Source of the DNA: Obrimoposthia wandeli
Lineage: Eukaryota
Direction: 5' to 3'
Assembly (NCBI GenBank): GCA_977020255.1
Contig: CDROCS010000410.1
Coordinates: 124,001 to 188,000, forward strand
Length of the DNA: 64,000 bases
Shown here: positions 38,938 through 46,000 of the stretch, one piece after another
Position numbering within the stretch: the stretch's first letter is position 1
Layout of the letters: each line of letters starts with the position of its first letter
Program-made: the position numbers and the translations under genes
Notes under the pieces: model-generated
Database searches by the model: none
Told to the model about the DNA's origin: nothing
What the model saw: the letters and a program-made list of their open reading frames with translations, nothing else

Positions 38938-41853
38938 TTGAAAAAGATTAAATTGTCGCTGACTAATTATACTGCTATTGCCTTCTCATCATTTCTATTT
39001 ATTACGATCAGTATACTAATATCAATCAGCTATAATCGCATGTCTGAAATGGCTCAAGACTCTGTATCACAACAGTTTCAGCGTTATGTTGACGATATCT
39101 ACACTTCGGTGAGCTATAAATACAGGCCAATCACCCAGCTTTTTGGCTACCTAAGTACAAGTTCTGATTGGGACCATGAGCAAGCCGCTGATATCAGTTT
39201 GATCAAATCAATAGACCTTGCTCGATACCTGTCGACCGATACCTTAACCAATTCTATTTATATGGGGTTTCCAAACGGCGATCTACTCGGTGCACATAAA
39301 CTCAGCTCTAAAACTAAGCAATATTATTATGACGCACCTGAATCCGCTAATTTTGTCATTGAAACATTGACCTATAAGCAAGAAAATTCAAATGAATTGA
39401 CTCGCGTTTACCTCAGCAACAATTTTGAAATCATTGATACGACCACAACAAAAAACGATTCATTGAATGTCTTTGATCGGGCTTGGTATAAAATAGGGAT
39501 ACAGAGTTCGAGTTTAATTCCCACGCCTGTATATAGAGATCTAAGGACGAATGAAGATTCATTAACCTTGGTACAAAGGCACAAGTTTGCCAATATTGTC
39601 ATCGCAACCGACCTTAATATTCCGACCATAGTCAATAGCTTAGCAACCTCTGATTTAAGTGATGATGCGATACGCGTATTATTCGGAGATAAAGGACAGT
39701 TCGTTGTTTATCACGATAACGATAGCCGTTTCTCTAACTTTATTGATACATCCGTTGATGATGTGATTGGGGATTTACTACAAAAAGAACAATTTAAACG
39801 TGTTATCCAAAATAATCTTAATAAAAATAATCTTTTCACCTTTAATTTCAGAGGTAAAAAATGGTTAGCTCAAAGTCATAATATAACCTTCATGCAGAAC
39901 AACAATGCACGTCTTCTCATTGCCGTGCCTGAAGACAGCATTTTAGGTCCATCTAAAAAAATGCTCCATGAAACTATGCTAATACTCGTTTCAGTCGGGT
40001 TTTTATTCATTCCATTAAGTTGGTTATTCGCTCGCGTATTAACACGGCCTCTGCGTACGATATCAATACAAATTAAACAAGTTACTGCGCTGGATGTTTC
40101 CGAAACTACAACAAAGCTCTCTAATATTGAAGAAATAGCTGATCTGCAACTCTCTACAGCTAAAATGCGAAAAACACTGGATGATTTTTTACGCTTACTC
40201 ACCATGCTTTCAAACGAACAAGATATTCATAGCCTATTAGAAAAAACCTGTGATAAAGCCAGTATCATGCTCAACGCTGATAGTGCTTTTGTATATTTAA
40301 AATCTGAAGAAGACGACAGCATATTAAAGCCCTTTATTTTGCATACTCAACATGACAGTATAAAAACGGATATTAGCCTGTGCCCTAACCTCTCGACACA
40401 GTGGCCGTATGAAAAATTAAGAAACAACGTCAATGTAAAGGATATTCAATTCAACCTTATCCACCCAATGCTTAAAACAGCGTTAATTAAAGCAGGCATA
40501 CATCCTGAAAATAGTAATGTTTATACGTTAACTATTCCTTTGGTTAATCGCAGAGGTGATATTCTCGGCCTAATTGGTTTTAGTTACGATCAATGTCTTG
40601 ATGGAGAAGAACTGACGCATGTAATGGGCGTGGCAAAAGCGTTATCTGACTTTATATCGCTGTCTTTTGAAGGTCAAGATTCGATAGCCAAGCAAAAAGA
40701 ATTACTCAATTCATTTATTCAATTAATTGCTGGCGCGATTGATACGAAATCACCGTATACAGGTGCTCACTGCCAGCGTGTGCCTGAACTTGCAAGTATG
40801 CTAGCAGCCGAAGCATCTAAATCAACACAAACACAATTCCGTAAATTCAACTTAGATTCAGAGGGCTGGGAGCAACTCAACATCGCAGCTTGGCTACATG
40901 ATTGCGGTAAAGTAACAACACCTGAATATATAATAGATAAAGCTACGAAATTAGAAACTATTTATAATCGGATTAATGAAGTAAGAATGCGTTTTGAAGT
41001 CCTTATCCGCGATGCTCAGATCCAAGCATTAACGGCTATATCACAAGGTGAATGCGCGAAACAAACTAACAATATTCTAGCTGATAATGTCGCTCAAATT
41101 GAAGATGATTTTGCATTTATCGCGCAGTGTAATCTTGGTGAAAATAAGATTGATGACGAAGCGATTGACAGAATTGAATCGATATCTCAGCAGACTTGGT
41201 TACGCTTTCTTGATGACGAACTTGGACTGTCTCCTGCTGAACTGGTACAAAAAAATAGAACAGCACCTGTCAGTCTCCCTATCATGGAGCCTTTGTTGTC
41301 AGATCGCGCTGAACACATGATTGCACACATAGACAACTCATTGGAATTAGAAGCTCATTTACGCTTTAATATGAAACGTCCACTACAGCGTAATAATTTA
41401 GGTGAACTGCATAACCTCATGATCCAACGTGGCACCATTAATGCTGAAGAACGTTACGTCATTAACCACCATGTTATCCAAACAATTACGATGTTGGAAC
41501 AACTGCCGCTACCACCCCATCTAAGCCGAGTACCAGAGATCGCAGGTGGCCATCACGAACAATTAAATGGTCGCGGTTATCCACGCGGTTATCAAGAAGA
41601 AGAAATATCGCTTGAAGCACGTATATTAGCTATTTCAGATGTCTTTGAGGCGCTAACAGCCAGCGATAGACCTTATAAAACAGCTAAATCATTGAGTCAA
41701 AGTATTAAAATATTAAGCTTTATGAGTAAAGACAGGCATATAGACAGCGATCTATTTAAACTGTTTTTGAGTTCTGGTATTTATCTTGATTATGCACACA
41801 AATATCTCAAGCCAGAGCAAATTGATCATGTTGATATTTCAGAATATTTATAG
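38938..41853 (+). CDS. Membrane sensor HD-GYP protein (Cache-like, HAMP, GAF-like, HD-GYP)
   Basis: Two TM helices, KSPYTGAHCQRV, LHDCGK, HHEQLNGRGYPRG, DVFEALTASDRPYK. Confidence 0.9.
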   Translation: MKKIKLSLTNYTAIAFSSFLFITISILISISYNRMSEMAQDSVSQQFQRYVDDIYTSVSYKYRPITQLFGYLSTSSDWDHEQAADISLIKSIDLARYLSTDTLTNSIYMGFPNGDLLGAHKLSSKTKQYYYDAPESANFVIETLTYKQENSNELTRVYLSNNFEIIDTTTTKNDSLNVFDRAWYKIGIQSSSLIPTPVYRDLRTNEDSLTLVQRHKFANIVIATDLNIPTIVNSLATSDLSDDAIRVLFGDKGQFVVYHDNDSRFSNFIDTSVDDVIGDLLQKEQFKRVIQNNLNKNNLFTFNFRGKKWLAQSHNITFMQNNNARLLIAVPEDSILGPSKKMLHETMLILVSVGFLFIPLSWLFARVLTRPLRTISIQIKQVTALDVSETTTKLSNIEEIADLQLSTAKMRKTLDDFLRLLTMLSNEQDIHSLLEKTCDKASIMLNADSAFVYLKSEEDDSILKPFILHTQHDSIKTDISLCPNLSTQWPYEKLRNNVNVKDIQFNLIHPMLKTALIKAGIHPENSNVYTLTIPLVNRRGDILGLIGFSYDQCLDGEELTHVMGVAKALSDFISLSFEGQDSIAKQKELLNSFIQLIAGAIDTKSPYTGAHCQRVPELASMLAAEASKSTQTQFRKFNLDSEGWEQLNIAAWLHDCGKVTTPEYIIDKATKLETIYNRINEVRMRFEVLIRDAQIQALTAISQGECAKQTNNILADNVAQIEDDFAFIAQCNLGENKIDDEAIDRIESISQQTWLRFLDDELGLSPAELVQKNRTAPVSLPIMEPLLSDRAEHMIAHIDNSLELEAHLRFNMKRPLQRNNLGELHNLMIQRGTINAEERYVINHHVIQTITMLEQLPLPPHLSRVPEIAGGHHEQLNGRGYPRGYQEEEISLEARILAISDVFEALTASDRPYKTAKSLSQSIKILSFMSKDRHIDSDLFKLFLSSGIYLDYAHKYLKPEQIDHVDISEYL

Positions 41854-41863
41854 TGCTGAGACT

Positions 41864-41943
41864 TATAGTATCGAAGGTATGATATCGAAAGTTATAATAT
41901 CGAAGGTATAAAGGTATGGTATCGAAAGTTATAGTATCTAAGG
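41864..41943. repeat. Degenerate 14/15-bp tandem repeat, 5 units plus a partial unit
   Basis: tatagtatcgaagg/tatgatatcgaaagt/tataatatcgaagg/tataaagg/tatggtatcgaaagt/tatagtatctaagg. Confidence 0.8.
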
Positions 41944-42019
41944 ATTATGCTAGCTGGGAACTGCAGAAATTGAGGATGCTAAGCTGAGCACTAAGCATTT
42001 TTTAAACACCAGAAACTAA

Positions 42020-42044
42020 AACGCCATCTACAAGAGATGGCGTT
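42020..42044 (-). terminator. Intrinsic terminator of the small-ORF transcript (may also work on +)
   Basis: AACGCCATCT-N5-AGATGGCGTT, followed by TTAGTTT on the minus strand. Confidence 0.8.
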
Positions 42045-42064
42045 AAATTTTGAATTCCTAGAAC

Positions 42065-42148
42065 TTAGTAACCTAAATGTCTTGGGTAAGTGAATTTTGT
42101 GTTATATAAATCACCGAAAACAGGAGTTGCAGGTACTGAATTTTTCAT
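42065..42148 (-). CDS. Putative 27-aa small protein MKNSVPATPVFGDLYNTKFTYPRHLGY (not in the ORF track)
   Basis: SD AAGGTGAG 4 nt before ATG, own promoter candidate upstream, terminator 20 nt after the stop. Confidence 0.6.
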   Translation of the reverse strand: MKNSVPATPVFGDLYNTKFTYPRHLGY

Positions 42149-42270
42149 AGGTCTCACCTTCTAAATCATTAATCAAAAATTGAACCACATGGCTCAGTTG
42201 ATCTCGGTTCCTTGGAGGCGGTTTAACGGACTCATCCTTTGAGCATTTTTCTATCTTCTTGTTCAGAAGA

Positions 42271-42305
42271 TGTGACCAATGTAACATAAATAATCCATTA
42301 CGCAA
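42271..42305 (-). promoter_or_regulatory. Sigma70 promoter overlapped by a CRP box
   Basis: -35 TTGCGT (42305-42300), 16-nt spacer, TGnTACATT (-10 at 42283-42278); CRP box TGTGA-CCAATG-TAACA at 42271-42286. Confidence 0.55.
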
Positions 42306-42412
42306 GCTTTCATTTGAAACCAATCACATAATCAAACAAATAAACTAGACTTTTGAAGACCTGATTGTGTTTACTTTCAGCTCGAGATTAATCAACAACC
42401 TATATATTTCGA

Positions 42413-45400
42413 CTACATATTGCGACGATATTTCCCCCCAGCTAAATACAACACATCGGTTAACTGAGATAAGCTCGTATAAGGCACCGCATTCATCAGT
42501 ACAGCAAAACTATTATCGCCAGCCAATAAGGCGGTCTTCATCGTGTCCAATGACAATGCAGCCTGCACTTTATGCTGTAGCTTAAACTGTAATACACTGT
42601 CTATTTGTTGCTGCTTTTTAGTTTCACTACAACGCACTAATTCTTTATCGTTTAATCGTGTCGCGTCATGCTGTTCCGTATCTCTGCTCATGCAATTCAC
42701 CCCCACCATATCAAGTTGTGCACTGCCTTTTAATTTTTCATAGTACATACTTTGCTGCTGTATTTGCGTGCGCTGATAACCGGTTTCAATTGCGCCAAGC
42801 ACCCCGCCACGACGGGCTAAACGATTAAACTCACCATAGACGGATTCTTCAACAAGATCGGTTAACTGCTCGATAATGTAACTACCTTGCAAGGGATTTT
42901 GATTTTTATTTAAGCCAAACTCGCGATTAATAATGGATTGAATGGACAGCGCTCGATAGACGGAATTTTCAGTCGGTGTCGTGATCGTTTCATCATAGGC
43001 ATTGGTATGTAAGCTATTGCAGTTATCGCACAACGCATACATAGCTTGTAGACTGGTGCGTATATCATTCAAGTCAATTTCTTGTGATTGCAGACTCCGA
43101 CCGGATGTTTGGATGTGGTACTTTAATTTTTGGCTACGCTCATTGGCCTTATATACCGACTTTAATGTTCGCGACCATATCCGTCGTGCTACGCGCCCTA
43201 TCACTGCATATTCAGGATCCATACCATTACTAAAGAAAAAGCTCAGTCGTGGCGCGACATCATCAATATCCAAACCTTGCGCTAGATAATATTCTAATAG
43301 CGTAAAACCGTTCGCCAATGTAAAGGCAAGTTGCGTGATAGGGTTCGCCCCTGCTTCACCAATGTGATAACCACTCACTGACACGGGATAAAATTTCTCA
43401 ATCGCGTTAGCACTAAAGTAGCCTTGCATATCAGCCATTAGCTTCAGCGAAAAATCTAATGAGAAAATACACTCATTTTGTGCGATCTCTTCTTTTAAAA
43501 TATCAGCTTGCAGCGTACCCCTGACTTTTTGATAGGTAGCGGTTTTCAATAGTGTATATTCAGCCTCTAAGCCAAGTAATTCACTCATTAATACCTGACC
43601 AGAAATGCCCAATAATTTAAGTCCTAGCCCCTCATGCCCTTGAGGTCGCCCCCCACGATACACAGGCCGTTGTTTAGCCGTCATGCCCGCAGAGGTTAAA
43701 TAGCGAGTTATGTGTTTGTTGGCTTTTGACCATAACTTCATTTTGGTTAAATACAGTTCAACTTGTTGATCAATCGCGGTATGTAAAAACCACGCCATAA
43801 GGATGGGTGCAGGGCCATTAATCGTCATAGATACCGACGTGCCGCTATCGCATAGGTCTATGCCTGAATACAGTATTTTCATATCATCAAGCGTTGCAAT
43901 CGACACACCTGACATGCCTATGCAGGCAAACACATCAGGGCTTAAAGCAGGATCGTGACCGTAAAGAGTATTAGGATCAAACGCCGTTGATAATCGAATC
44001 GATTTTTGGCCTTTAATTAAATAATGAAAACGCTTATTGGTATCTTCAGGTAAGCCTTCACCAGCAAACATCCGCGTCGGGTCTTCATCATTATGCCTTT
44101 TAGGGAAAACGCCCGCGGTATAAGGAAACTGTCCAGGGCAATTTTCATTCAGTAAAAAAGCAGTGATATTATCCCAATGCTGCTCATTTGGTTTCACCAC
44201 ATGCGGGACTACTGTACCGCTTAAACTCACAAAGTGGTCTTTATGCTCACCATACGTTTGATGAGAATCGATGGTATCAACCCCCTCTTCAATGCGTTTT
44301 AATGCCAATTCTTCTTCGTCTCTAAACCAAGCCAATAACGCATGCCTAAGTGGCACAGACAGCTTAGTTAAAAGTTTGTTATAACGTGCCCGTAACGGCG
44401 GTAAGATCATTTTTAGCGAAGCATCGGTAACTAAAAAACTGTGCTCATCAGATTCATTGGCTATATCGGCTTGTGGGTAGCGCCCTAGTTTAGTCGGTAA
44501 ACAAGGATCACCGAGATCAGCTAACACTTGATAACAACTATGCAATTCCCGAACTTGTGCTATTTGCTGCGCATTCGTATCGCTTAATTTTTGGTAATGG
44601 TTATAGATCCGCGTTAAATAATCCGGATGTTGTAAATTTAACTGACTTGCGGATAGTGTCCAATCATAACGGGGATAACGAGTGAGTACTTGCTGGTATA
44701 TTTTTTCAATATTAGGCTGTGTTGAAAAAGGTAACTTAGTGCCATATTTGGCCTTAAATTCGAACATCAAAAATGCGATAAATCGATTAAAACCATGATC
44801 GTCATAGTGGCTTGCTACCATAGGGAAAACAGGCGGTTCATTACGAACAGAACCTTTTACTTGCTGATTATTTTTTCCTTGTTGATTAAAACGCCATTGT
44901 TGTTGCACGTCATTAAACGCATCTTCACTGCCTTGTTGATCGGCTTTATTCAGCACCACAGCATCGGCATACTGTAACATCTCAATTTTTTCTAGCTGAC
45001 TACTGGCACCATAATCCTTGGTCATGAGATAAAGGCTAAAATCAACCATATCAACTATCGCACTGTCACTTTGACCAATACCTGCTGTTTCAATTAATAC
45101 CAGATCAAAACCTTGATTAATCAATAGCGGCACACAGGTTTGTAATGACTGACTGATCGAGACATTGGCTTGTCGCGTTGCTATCGACCGCATGAATAAC
45201 CGATCGTGCGGGAAGGTGTTTATACGAATCCGATCACCGAGCAAAGCCCCACCGGTTTTTTGAGCACTGGGGTCAACCGCTAAATAGGCAATCTTCATAT
45301 CAGGATAAAGCTGTAATAATGCCGCTAATAACTCATCAATAAAGGTACTTTTACCCGCACCGCCTGTGCCTGTGATCCCCATCACCACACTTTTTTTCAC

Positions 45401-46000
45401 ACCTTCGACGTTCGGTGACAATACAGGATCGACACTGGCTTTACGGTTATCACTAACCATACTATTCGTCGTTAATCGATCTTGCTCGATAGCCGTGATT
45501 AACTGTCCCAGATATAAATCAGTAGCAGGTTTTCTGGTTAATTTTTTAAGCTTAAATTTTGCGGTCGTTTTAGGTTTAACAGCGATTAAACGGGTTAATA
45601 AATCACTTATCATCTCGTCTAAACTCAGTACATCATCACTGGTATAAACGCGTGTAATACCTTCTGCTTCTAATCTTCTCGCTTCAGTTGCGGAAATAGT
45701 GGCACCGCCGCCAACGAATATTGCTGGTTTAGCCCCGACTTCGGCCAGACTAGATAGTAAATAACCGAAATAAGCATCATGCCCACCTTGATAGGAACTC
45801 ATCGCAATGGCATCTACGTCTTCTTGTAATGCGGCTGTCACCACATCATGCACTGAGCGGTTAATGCCTAGATGAATAACTTCAACGCCTCGCGCTTGTA
45901 ATAACCGTCGTACAATATTAATTGCCGCGTCATGACCATCAAACAGACAGGTCGCGGTTAAAATGCGTAAGGGGAATTTAGTTGAAGTCGTTTTCATCAC
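42413..46000 (-). CDS. icmF: Fused isobutyryl-CoA mutase IcmF (B12 domain - MeaB G-protein - mutase)
   Basis: FDGHDAAINI (DxH B12 ligand), SSYQGGH, GTGGAGKS, ETAGIGQ, NKAD, EDPTRMFAGEG (Phe at the specificity site), QADILKE, C-terminal YRRNM. Confidence 0.92.
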   Translation of the reverse strand: MMKTTSTKFPLRILTATCLFDGHDAAINIVRRLLQARGVEVIHLGINRSVHDVVTAALQEDVDAIAMSSYQGGHDAYFGYLLSSLAEVGAKPAIFVGGGATISATEARRLEAEGITRVYTSDDVLSLDEMISDLLTRLIAVKPKTTAKFKLKKLTRKPATDLYLGQLITAIEQDRLTTNSMVSDNRKASVDPVLSPNVEGVKKSVVMGITGTGGAGKSTFIDELLAALLQLYPDMKIAYLAVDPSAQKTGGALLGDRIRINTFPHDRLFMRSIATRQANVSISQSLQTCVPLLINQGFDLVLIETAGIGQSDSAIVDMVDFSLYLMTKDYGASSQLEKIEMLQYADAVVLNKADQQGSEDAFNDVQQQWRFNQQGKNNQQVKGSVRNEPPVFPMVASHYDDHGFNRFIAFLMFEFKAKYGTKLPFSTQPNIEKIYQQVLTRYPRYDWTLSASQLNLQHPDYLTRIYNHYQKLSDTNAQQIAQVRELHSCYQVLADLGDPCLPTKLGRYPQADIANESDEHSFLVTDASLKMILPPLRARYNKLLTKLSVPLRHALLAWFRDEEELALKRIEEGVDTIDSHQTYGEHKDHFVSLSGTVVPHVVKPNEQHWDNITAFLLNENCPGQFPYTAGVFPKRHNDEDPTRMFAGEGLPEDTNKRFHYLIKGQKSIRLSTAFDPNTLYGHDPALSPDVFACIGMSGVSIATLDDMKILYSGIDLCDSGTSVSMTINGPAPILMAWFLHTAIDQQVELYLTKMKLWSKANKHITRYLTSAGMTAKQRPVYRGGRPQGHEGLGLKLLGISGQVLMSELLGLEAEYTLLKTATYQKVRGTLQADILKEEIAQNECIFSLDFSLKLMADMQGYFSANAIEKFYPVSVSGYHIGEAGANPITQLAFTLANGFTLLEYYLAQGLDIDDVAPRLSFFFSNGMDPEYAVIGRVARRIWSRTLKSVYKANERSQKLKYHIQTSGRSLQSQEIDLNDIRTSLQAMYALCDNCNSLHTNAYDETITTPTENSVYRALSIQSIINREFGLNKNQNPLQGSYIIEQLTDLVEESVYGEFNRLARRGGVLGAIETGYQRTQIQQQSMYYEKLKGSAQLDMVGVNCMSRDTEQHDATRLNDKELVRCSETKKQQQIDSVLQFKLQHKVQAALSLDTMKTALLAGDNSFAVLMNAVPYTSLSQLTDVLYLAGGKYRRNM

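What the first reader, a model, noticed from the sequence alone, without database searches (positions are those of the whole stretch)
42015..42305. Hidden ~255-nt transcription unit encoding a 27-aa peptide: candidate dual-function sRNA
Seen on the minus strand: -35/extended -10 promoter overlapped by a near-consensus CRP box; predicted +1 at 42271 coincides with a 7-bp 5' hairpin; a GCUCA-AAGGA-UGAGU hairpin (42244-42230) and a second CAAGGA; a third hairpin (42196-42181); SD AAGGTGAG; ORF MKNSVPATPVFGDLYNTKFTYPRHLGY; intrinsic terminator. Known: GGA in hairpin loops is the CsrA/RsmA site, and Spot42/SpfP, AzuCR and VcdRP are CRP-repressed RNAs encoding 15-29 aa peptides. I do not recognise this sequence as any of them. 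Inference: a new carbon-responsive small protein or sRNA lying downstream of the ldh-bkd-icmF operon.
Basis: partly seen in the sequence, partly recalled or inferred. Interest (0 to 1): 0.75.

Follow-up and report, generated by a model that had tools for sequence, protein, structure and literature searches.

The report
Moritella version of the VcdRP gene
The hidden small gene is real and conserved, but it is not new: it is the Moritella counterpart of VcdRP, a known sugar-responsive RNA of Vibrio that encodes a tiny protein. The Moritella form lacks the part that lets the Vibrio RNA silence other genes.

Summary
A ~345-nt block (42005-42350, minus strand) is present once in each of the 13 Moritellaceae genomes searched. 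It is also in a second Moritella contig of this assembly. It is 89-98% identical within the genus, while icmF third codon positions are only 45-79% identical and both flanks are unalignable.

The pattern of change fits an independent small gene:
- promoter boxes are conserved and their spacers vary;
- the Shine-Dalgarno sequence and ATG are fixed;
- the 27-codon ORF is intact everywhere, and its changes fall mainly on third codon positions;
- a divergent genome has an in-frame extra codon and compensatory terminator changes.

The unit is not new. Its 47-nt leader core is nearly identical to the leader of Vibrio vcdRP (Venkat et al. 2021). The peptide aligns end to end with VcdP (hhalign 94%, E 1e-7), and the CRP box sits in the same place.

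It differs in four ways. The peptide is only ~33% identical and falls below the NCBIfam cut-off. The ~100-nt 3' segment with the CCCC base-pairing seed is missing. The U-tail is short in all but the most divergent genome (G012). In Moritella proper the unit follows icmF.

No expression data could be obtained. I rate it a new variant of a known kind, of moderate interest.

The parts
42005..42350 (-). The whole conserved block: promoter, leader, small ORF and terminator. This is the Moritella vcdRP-like unit.
   Evidence: Conservation starts and stops abruptly at these borders in 17 Moritellaceae sequences. The flanks are 37-40% identical, the block 86-99%.
42313..42328 (-). CRP-like box 1, TGTGA-N6-TCAAA, 7 nt upstream of the -35. 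It occupies the same position as the CRP box of Vibrio vcdRP promoters.
   Evidence: The half-sites are invariant and the central spacer varies in all 17 copies. It aligns with TGTGA-N6-TCAC boxes in the Vibrio loci. CRP binding and repression were shown for V. cholerae vcdRP (PMC8672173).
42300..42305 (-). -35 hexamer TTGCGT (Vibrio: TTGTAA).
   Evidence: AAAGCTTGC is invariant within the genus and the following spacer is variable. The TTG is invariant across both families.
42278..42286 (-). Extended -10, TGtTACATT.
   Evidence: Invariant in Moritella. It reads TGTTATATT in the divergent G012 and TATATT/TATTAT in Vibrio.
42271..42286 (-). CRP-like box 2, TGTTA-N6-TCACA, overlapping -10 and +1.
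   Evidence: It is not present in the Vibrio promoters. Because it overlaps the -10, its conservation cannot be separated from that of the promoter.
42253..42271 (-). Predicted +1 (42271) and the 5' hairpin SL1, AUCUUCU-GAACA-AGAAGAU.
   Evidence: The stem is kept while the loop loses 3-5 nt in four genomes. Vibrio loci have a hairpin of different sequence at the same place. The transcription start is inferred from the -10 spacing and from the 103-nt 5'UTR reported for V. cholerae. It was not measured.
42202..42248 (-). The 47-nt leader core. It holds the GGA hairpin SL2 (42230-42244), the anti-Shine-Dalgarno-like CGCCU (42216-42220) and the second GGA (CAAGGA, 42209-42214).
   Evidence: Mean identity is 99.7% within the genus and 45/47 with G012. 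It is nearly identical in Vibrio vcdRP leaders. The core pattern was found in 33 of 401 genomes of the order, always beside a VcdP-type ORF, with 0 control hits.
42181..42196 (-). Hairpin SL3 followed by a U-run. It is a weak terminator-like element inside the leader.
   Evidence: G-U changes to A-U in the stem and the loop varies. This stretch is not conserved in Vibrio.
42154..42160 (-). Shine-Dalgarno AAGGUGA.
   Evidence: AGGTG is invariant in both families, while the 5-6-nt spacer to the ATG varies.
42065..42148 (-). 27-codon ORF plus stop: MKNSVPATPVFGDLYNTKFTYPRHLGY, a VcdP-like small protein.
   Evidence: The ORF is intact in all 17 copies. Variable sites by codon position are 5:1:11. 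G012 has an in-frame extra codon and conservative replacements. It aligns with Vibrio VcdP by hhalign (94%, E 1.3e-7). The only NCBIfam hit is VcdP, at 13.5 bits.
42010..42044 (-). Rho-independent terminator: a 10-bp stem and 5-nt loop (42020-42044), then UUUUAGUUUCU.
   Evidence: C-G changes to U-A compensatorily in 4 genomes. By my reading of the alignment, G012 has three further compensatory pairs.

Best explanation
The block is an independent small gene, the Moritellaceae homologue of vcdRP. VcdRP (Vcr082) is the CRP-repressed dual-function RNA of Vibrio cholerae.

I infer the following mechanism.
- A sigma-70 promoter with a CRP box just upstream of the -35 drives a ~260-nt transcript when cAMP-CRP is low, that is, when preferred sugar is available.
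- A ~123-nt leader precedes a 27-aa VcdP-like peptide. The leader's 47-nt core is almost unchanged between Vibrionaceae and Moritellaceae.
- By analogy with VcdP, the peptide would bind and stimulate citrate synthase.

Unlike Vibrio VcdRP, the Moritella RNA ends ~45 nt after the stop codon. It has no 3' segment with the four-cytosine seed that Vibrio VcdR uses to repress PTS mRNAs. Outside the divergent G012 it also has only a 4-U tail. It is therefore most likely a 'VcdP-only' mRNA, or it uses another, unknown RNA function.

The leader core carries a GGA hairpin, a second GGA and a CGCCU that can pair with the Shine-Dalgarno AGGUG. Its most likely role is to control vcdP translation.

What is shown: homology, conservation, coding-type evolution, and absence of the seed. 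What is inferred: transcription, CRP repression, the GltA target and the leader's role.
For: 1. Conservation. There is one copy in each of the 13 genomes of the family, plus a second Moritella contig in this assembly. The block is 89-98% identical, against 45-79% at icmF third codon positions. The flanks are unalignable.

2. Element-wise pattern. The CRP half-sites, -35, extended -10, Shine-Dalgarno and ATG are fixed, while the spacers between them vary.

3. Coding signature.
- All 17 ORFs are intact.
- Variable sites by codon position are 5:1:11.
- G012 has an in-frame +1 codon with D>N, L>V, Y>F, T>S and R>K replacements.

4. Independence from icmF. In G012 the unit lies between HipA/HTH genes and an MCP gene, with icmF on another contig.

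5. Homology to vcdRP.
- The only NCBIfam hit for both peptides is NF053523 VcdP.
- Profile-profile comparison gives 94% probability, E 1.3e-7, over the full length.
- Vibrio-type loci found with NF053523 carry nearly the same leader core, Shine-Dalgarno, CRP-box position, 5' hairpin and terminator.
- The core pattern occurs only in genomes that hold a VcdP-type or Moritella-type ORF (33 of 401, 0 controls).

6. Published function of VcdRP. The paper reports a 306-nt transcript with the ORF at 104-193, CRP binding and repression, the CCCC seed at 223-232, and VcdP activating GltA (PMC8672173).

7. Seed absent. The distance from stop to T-tract is 43-52 nt, with no CCC, in the 15 Moritellaceae copies that the script could score. 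The alignment shows the same for the other two. In Vibrio-type loci the distance is 102-151 nt, with CCCC in 17 of 21 and CCC in the other 4.

8. Partners are encoded in Moritella genomes: CsrA, CRP, type-I citrate synthase, HPr and PTS EIIC.
Against: - There is no expression, transcription-start or translation evidence for Moritella.
- The peptide scores 13.5 bits against the VcdP model, whose cut-off is 50. It lacks the F-W pair that is invariant in Vibrio VcdP, so GltA binding may not be retained.
- The promoter is weak by consensus and is not called by the scan.
- With +1 at 42271, the centre of the upstream CRP box falls near -49.5. That is not a classical class I or class II position, and repression cannot be deduced from the sequence.
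- The leader helices are almost invariant, so covariation cannot confirm them.
- The anti-SD:SD pairing is predicted with high probability in most Vibrio leaders, but only at 0.1-0.55 in Moritella leaders.
- No terminator separates icmF from the unit, so some of the RNA may be operon read-through.
Confidence: 0.85

Rival explanations
1. The Moritella RNA is still a true dual-function RNA. It would act in trans through a different region, for example the invariant single-stranded CCGCCUCC/CAAGGAAC stretch of the leader, which is anti-Shine-Dalgarno-like. Or it would titrate or respond to CsrA through its two GGA motifs.
For: - The leader core is the most conserved part of the unit: 99.7% within the genus and nearly identical in Vibrio. 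It is more conserved than the peptide, which is 33% identical.
- ORF third positions are also far more conserved than icmF third positions: about 24 of 27 by my count from the alignment, against 0.45 for window versus M. viscosa. That suggests an RNA-level constraint.
- The GGA in a 5-bp hairpin loop matches the known CsrA site type, and CsrA is encoded.
Against: - In V. cholerae, 3' fragments of 156 and 87 nt that lack the leader suffice for target repression. No trans function of the leader is known.
- Two GGA motifs are far fewer than in Csr sponge RNAs.
- The short interrupted U-tail of most copies argues against strong Hfq binding; this rests on general knowledge of Hfq-dependent sRNAs.
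- The same conservation is explained by cis control of translation.
Confidence: 0.2
2. The region is merely the 3'UTR and terminator of the ldh-bkd-icmF operon. The ORF and promoter motifs would be incidental.
For: There is no terminator between the icmF stop (42413) and the block. In the genus Moritella the unit always follows icmF.
Against: - The 60 nt next to icmF are unconserved, while the block starts abruptly with promoter elements.
- The unit exists away from icmF in G012 and in Vibrio-type genomes.
- The Vibrio homologue has a mapped transcription start of its own.
Confidence: 0.04
3. It is a non-coding sRNA and the 27-codon frame is not translated.
For: Short ORFs arise by chance. The Shine-Dalgarno is predicted to be mostly paired (0.73-0.97).
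Against: - The frame is intact in 17 of 17 copies.
- Changes are biased to the third codon position, and there is an in-frame codon insertion.
- Shine-Dalgarno and ATG are fixed while the spacer varies.
- The homologous Vibrio ORF is translated, as shown by GFP fusion and SPA tag.
Confidence: 0.05
4. It is a new family unrelated to VcdRP. The resemblance would be convergent.
For: The peptide is below the NCBIfam threshold. The genomic context and the 3' end differ.
Against: Convergence cannot plausibly explain the following together: a 47-nt near-identical leader core, the same order of CRP box, -35, -10, 5' hairpin, core, Shine-Dalgarno, ORF and terminator, and a full-length profile match of the peptides.
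Confidence: 0.02

Closest known systems
VcdRP (Vcr082) of Vibrio cholerae and other Vibrionaceae; NCBIfam NF053523 'small protein VcdP' (Venkat et al. 2021, EMBO J, PMC8672173)
   Same: - The order of parts is the same: CRP box next to the -35, a 5' hairpin at +1, a nearly identical 47-nt leader core with a GGA hairpin and CGCCUCCAAGGAAC, Shine-Dalgarno AAGGUGA, a 27-29-codon ORF ending F-x-Y-P-x-x-x-G-Y, and a Rho-independent terminator.
- There is a single copy per genome.
   Different: - The peptide is only ~33% identical (13.5 bits against a cut-off of 50). The invariant F-W of VcdP is replaced.
- The ~100-nt 3' region with the CCCC seed, and an extra hairpin, are absent.
- The U-tail is 4 U instead of 7-9 (7 in the divergent G012).
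- The transcript is ~262 nt instead of 306 nt.
- There is an extra CRP-like box over -10/+1 and an extra terminator-like hairpin in the leader.
- The unit sits downstream of icmF rather than between vc2278 and vc2279.
Spot 42/SpfP and AzuCR/AzuC of E. coli
   Same: These are CRP-repressed transcripts encoding 15-28-aa proteins that act on carbon metabolism.
   Different: There is no sequence similarity: Rfam found no match in the window, Spot 42 included. The position of the ORF and the length of the leader differ. The resemblance is in mode of action only.
SgrS/SgrT
   Same: It is a precedent for a dual-function RNA family in which one of the two functions is missing in some lineages. In SgrST it is the sgrT ORF that is lost (PMC8672173 discussion).
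   Different: Here the missing module is the base-pairing seed, not the ORF. The sequences are unrelated and the regulator is different (SgrR versus CRP).

Membership tests
VcdRP / VcdP (NF053523) | The small ORF scores above the NCBIfam equivalog cut-off of 50 bits. | tested here: not met
   13.5 bits (E 0.045) for the window peptide and 12.7 bits for G012. Only the C-terminal 13 aa align. The family model finds no Moritellaceae genome at E<=1e-3.
VcdRP / VcdP (NF053523) | The peptide is homologous to VcdP over its full length. | tested here: met
   hhalign of 8 Moritellaceae peptides against 11 Vibrio-type peptides gives probability 94.1% and E 1.3e-7 over 27 aligned columns. Shared residues are M-K, Y/F at 15-16, F-x-Y-P and G-Y-stop.
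VcdRP / VcdP (NF053523) | [quoted passage not shown] | tested here: met
   The core AAATGCTCAAAGGATGAGTCCG-N4-6-CGCCTCCAAGGAACCGAGA is shared. The pattern hits 12 Moritellaceae genomes and 21 genomes with a VcdP match, and nothing else, among 401 genomes, with 0 reversed-pattern controls.
VcdRP / VcdP (NF053523) | A CRP binding site in the promoter and repression by cAMP-CRP. | tested here: inconclusive
   The sequence feature is met. TGTGA-N6-TCAAA (9 of 10) lies directly upstream of the -35, as in the Vibrio loci, with invariant half-sites and a variable centre. CRP is encoded. Binding and repression cannot be tested here.
VcdRP / VcdP (NF053523) | A 3' base-pairing module with four consecutive cytosines (VcdR seed, nt 223-232). 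| tested here: not met
   There is no CCC or CCCC between stop codon and terminator in any of the 17 Moritellaceae copies. The 3'UTR is 43-52 nt, against 102-151 nt in the Vibrio-type loci, which carry CCCC in 17 of 21 and CCC in the other 4.
VcdRP / VcdP (NF053523) | A Rho-independent terminator at the 3' end. | tested here: met
   A 10-bp stem (42044-42020) followed by a T-run, with compensatory changes among genomes.
VcdRP / VcdP (NF053523) | A discrete Hfq-bound transcript processed by RNase E, and a translated peptide that activates GltA. | not testable with these tools
Only the presence of a type-I citrate synthase gene could be shown.
CsrA-regulated leader / Csr-type RNA | Several GGA motifs, at least one in a hairpin loop, and binding by CsrA. 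| tested here: inconclusive
   Two invariant GGA motifs are present: the AAGGA loop of SL2, and CAAGGA 26 nt downstream. CsrA is encoded. There is no Rfam CsrB/C-type match. No binding data exist, and none is reported in the papers read.

The most novel reading that the evidence does not exclude
The Moritellaceae unit is a natural 'seed-less' vcdRP. It suggests that the small-protein mRNA and the 3' base-pairing module are separable in evolution; whether the module was gained in Vibrionaceae or lost in Moritellaceae is not resolved. The real core of the family would then be the 47-nt leader, nearly invariant across two bacterial families. It would be an uncharacterised riboregulator: either a CsrA-responsive or otherwise triggered switch that frees a sequestered Shine-Dalgarno, or a second trans-acting seed.
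Probability: 0.3. Interest if true: 0.6.

Novelty: new variant of a known kind. Interest (0 to 1): 0.4.

Why it matters
VcdRP is one of about ten characterised dual-function RNAs, and in the papers read here it is described only in Vibrio species.

This finding extends the family to Moritellaceae, psychrophilic marine bacteria. Among the genomes compared here is one labelled Moritella viscosa in its source record. NCBI's VcdP family model does not reach the Moritellaceae peptide, which scores far below its cut-off.

The Moritellaceae form keeps the peptide and the leader but lacks the known base-pairing module. A 2025 review (PMC12612679) asks which of the two functions of dual RNAs came first, and whether one can be lost. 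It names VcdRP as a candidate case. The comparison also picks out the leader core, not studied so far, as the most constrained element of the family.

For the scan itself, this is a case where a correct structural reading was labelled 'unknown' although it belongs to a known family.

Tried and rejected
- Rfam found nothing, either at gathering thresholds over the whole window or at permissive E-values over 41500-42800. VcdRP is apparently not matched by any Rfam model.
- Pfam had no hit for the peptide.
- The genome search 'relatives' failed because the assembly has no placed relatives.
- The genome-contig scan with the IcmF C-terminus returned only ~60%-identical proteins from other phyla, which was useless for synteny.
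- The exact look-up of the window IcmF found nothing. Exact look-ups of the peptides found nothing either, not even for a Vibrio VcdP, so that collection says nothing about such small proteins.
- The Moritella peptide profile gave weak hits to residues 1-16 in several genomes of the order. These proved to be antisense frames of a conserved gene and were rejected as chance.
- I asked whether loss of the seed is explained by loss of PTS targets. It is not: HPr and 3-5 EIIC genes are present.
- A leader-peptide attenuator for a downstream gene was rejected, because the downstream neighbours differ among genomes.
- A type I toxin and a RiPP precursor were considered and dropped. The peptide is not hydrophobic, and no maturase neighbours are present.
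- Earlier scan notes hold nothing on VcdRP.

Full report
**Setting.** The candidate lies in a 560-nt gap between two convergent genes. One is a 1195-aa fused isobutyryl-CoA-mutase-type gene (icmF; B12-binding, MeaB and MM_CoA_mutase domains) at 42413-46000 on the minus strand. The other is a 971-aa HD-GYP-type gene at 38938-41853 on the plus strand. The window is contig C410 of a 1.35-Gb assembly. The IcmF relatives at 78-94% identity are labelled Moritella in their source records, so the contig comes from a Moritella-like bacterium.

**Observation.**
- TTGCGT, a 16-nt spacer, then TGtTACATT.
- TGTTA-N6-TCACA over -10/+1 (42286-42271).
- A 7-bp hairpin starting at 42271.
- GCUCA-AAGGA-UGAGU at 42244-42230, and CAAGGA at 42214-42209.
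- A hairpin at 42196-42181.
- Shine-Dalgarno AAGGTGA at 42160-42154.
- The 27-codon ORF at 42148-42065.
- A terminator at 42044-42020.

On single-sequence statistics these features are unimpressive. The consensus scan does not call the promoter and finds only the two hairpin-plus-T-run sites. One-mismatch CRP boxes occur 4 times in the window against 2.3 expected. The fold z-score is -1.8. Rfam has no match.

**Comparative evidence that the unit is real.**

*Distribution.* A second Moritella-like contig of the same assembly (C506) is syntenic, with icmF ~80% identical at the nucleotide level. It carries the block at 94% identity, and conservation starts abruptly at 42350 and ends just after the T-run. 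Loci fetched through IcmF relatives, and then whole-genome searches, show exactly one copy in each of the 13 genomes of the family.

*Identity by region.* Mean pairwise identity within the genus is:

| Region | Identity |
|---|---|
| 5' flank | 0.37 |
| Promoter | 0.86 |
| Leader | 0.95 |
| 47-nt core | 0.997 |
| SD-ATG spacer | 0.68 |
| ORF | 0.94 |
| 3'UTR and terminator | 0.90 |
| 3' flank | 0.40 |

For comparison, icmF third codon positions are only 0.45-0.79 identical between the window and the same genomes.

*Gene-like pattern of change.*
- The CRP half-sites are fixed while the centre varies.
- AAAGCTTGC (-35) and TTTATGTTACATTGGTCAC (-10 region) are fixed while the spacer between them varies.
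- Shine-Dalgarno and ATG are fixed while the spacer between them varies.

*Coding evidence.* All 17 ORFs are intact. Variable sites by codon position are 5:1:11.

*The divergent family member.* G012 is 73% identical. It keeps every element and has a 28-codon ORF, MKNLVSSAPLCFGNVFKAQFSYPKHLGY. That ORF has an in-frame extra codon and conservative replacements. Its terminator has a different sequence with compensatory pairs. In G012 the unit lies between HipA/HTH genes and an MCP gene, with icmF on another contig. The unit is therefore an independent gene, not an appendage of icmF.

**Identity.**

*Peptide.* A profile of the Moritellaceae peptides finds only the 13 Moritellaceae among 401 genomes sampled from the order. 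The weak remaining hits are antisense frames of a conserved gene. The only NCBIfam family hit by both peptides is NF053523, 'small protein VcdP'. The scores are 13.5 and 12.7 bits against a cut-off of 50, over the C-terminal 13 residues.

*Leader.* Searching that family in the same 401 genomes gave 24 genomes above the cut-off, with peptides such as MKGLPSAMFWLNSSVYTSNFAYPTSFGY. The DNA around those ORFs has nearly the same leader core as Moritella: aaatgctcaaaggatgagtccg...atcgcctccaaggaaccgaga. It also has the same Shine-Dalgarno, a TGTGA-N6-TCAC box directly upstream of a TTGTAA -35, a 5' hairpin at the start, and a terminator.

*Linkage of core and ORF.* A pattern for the core hits 33 of the 401 genomes. 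These are 12 Moritellaceae and 21 genomes with a VcdP match, with no reversed-pattern control hits. The thirteenth Moritellaceae genome has one A>G change in the core.

*Profile comparison.* Profile-profile comparison of the two peptide alignments gives 94% probability and E 1.3e-7 over the full length, at 33% identity.

*Conclusion.* The unit is therefore a homologue of vcdRP. For V. cholerae, Venkat et al. 2021 report the following (PMC8672173):
- a 306-nt Hfq-bound transcript with a mapped start;
- the ORF at positions 104-193, translated;
- CRP binding and repression;
- RNase E processing;
- a four-cytosine seed at 223-232 that represses ptsG, nagE, treB and ptsHI;
- VcdP binding to and activating citrate synthase.

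Neither that paper nor the reviews I read mention Moritella, CsrA or a role for the 5'UTR.

**What differs.**
- In Vibrio-type loci the stop codon is followed by 102-151 nt before the T-run, which is 7-9 T long. CCCC lies 30-38 nt after the stop in 17 of 21 loci, and the remaining four have CCC.
- In Moritellaceae the distance is 43-52 nt, with no CCC. The T-run is 4 in the genus Moritella and 7 in G012.
- The alignment suggests that the stretch containing the seed, and a further hairpin, are simply missing, while the GGAATTC just 3' of the seed is retained.
- The direction of change, loss or gain, cannot be decided without an outgroup.
- The missing seed is not explained by missing targets. 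Moritella genomes encode HPr and 3-5 PTS EIIC proteins. They also encode CRP, CsrA and a type-I citrate synthase.
- Features specific to Moritellaceae are the second CRP-like box over -10/+1, the terminator-like hairpin SL3 in the leader, and, in the genus Moritella only, the position after icmF. No terminator intervenes there, so operon read-through may add to the RNA.

**Leader.** RNAalifold across both families keeps two helices: the GGA hairpin, and CGCCU paired with the AGGUG of the Shine-Dalgarno. Both are invariant, so there is no covariation support. In single-sequence partition functions the anti-SD:SD helix has probability 0.4-1.0 in most Vibrio leaders, where it extends to UAUCGCCU/AGGUGAUA. 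In Moritella leaders it is only 0.1-0.55, although the Shine-Dalgarno itself is predicted paired at 0.73-0.97. A divergent Vibrionaceae group (L139, L141) changes the GGA hairpin to GCUUA-AGGA-UUAAGC and replaces the AUCAA/UUGAU helix by ACAAG/CUUGU. By my reading of the sequences, these are compensatory changes. I take the leader to be a translational control element. CsrA involvement is a hypothesis only.

**Verdict.** The unit is a divergent VcdRP homologue that lacks the VcdR seed: a new variant of a known kind, of moderate interest.

**Limits.** No transcript, transcription-start, translation or binding data could be obtained. Taxon names of the sampled genomes were withheld, so 'Vibrio-type' rests on the NCBIfam VcdP match and the published Vibrio alignment, not on labels.

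Noticed in passing
window 41863-41938; L082, L093, L095, L098, L100, L101, L102 just 3' of the terminator: Directly downstream of the unit's terminator, different Moritella genomes carry different short tandem arrays. The window has 14-15-nt units x3. Others have (CACAATT)x5-12, (CTCCAAATA)x7, (CCAACTAT)x4-5 and (CTAACCTAT)x3. This looks like a hypervariable microsatellite spot at a fixed genomic position.
   Followed up: partly
G000:C410 (window) and G000:C506:36659-40010 (L082): The 1.35-Gb assembly holds two syntenic Moritella-like contigs that are only ~80% identical in icmF. Two different Moritella species therefore appear to be present in one, probably host-derived, assembly.
   Followed up: partly
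window 42271-42286: A second CRP-like box, TGTTA-N6-TCACA, lies over -10/+1, 42 bp (four helical turns) from the first box centre to centre. It is present in all Moritellaceae copies and absent from Vibrio vcdRP promoters.
   Followed up: partly
window 42172-42196: Hairpin SL3 plus AUUUUUGAUU is scored as terminator-like inside the leader. It might produce a ~100-nt short leader RNA, or attenuate transcription before the ORF. It is specific to Moritellaceae.
   Followed up: no
L103:1476-1885 (G013): An 8-nt duplication (TTACTAGA) at the stop codon creates a new stop at the same place and leaves the 27-aa peptide unchanged.
   Followed up: no
window 42413-46000 (icmF): Outside Moritella, the nearest IcmF relatives are only 57-67% identical and come from mixed phyla, many of them Bacteroidota. 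This suggests a patchy or horizontally acquired gene.
   Followed up: no
G141:C1:2586736-2586801, G189:C51:67207-67272, G376:C23:496878-496928: These are weak sub-threshold NF053523 (VcdP) matches in genomes of the order that lack the leader-core pattern. They could be further divergent vcdRP lineages or chance hits.
   Followed up: no
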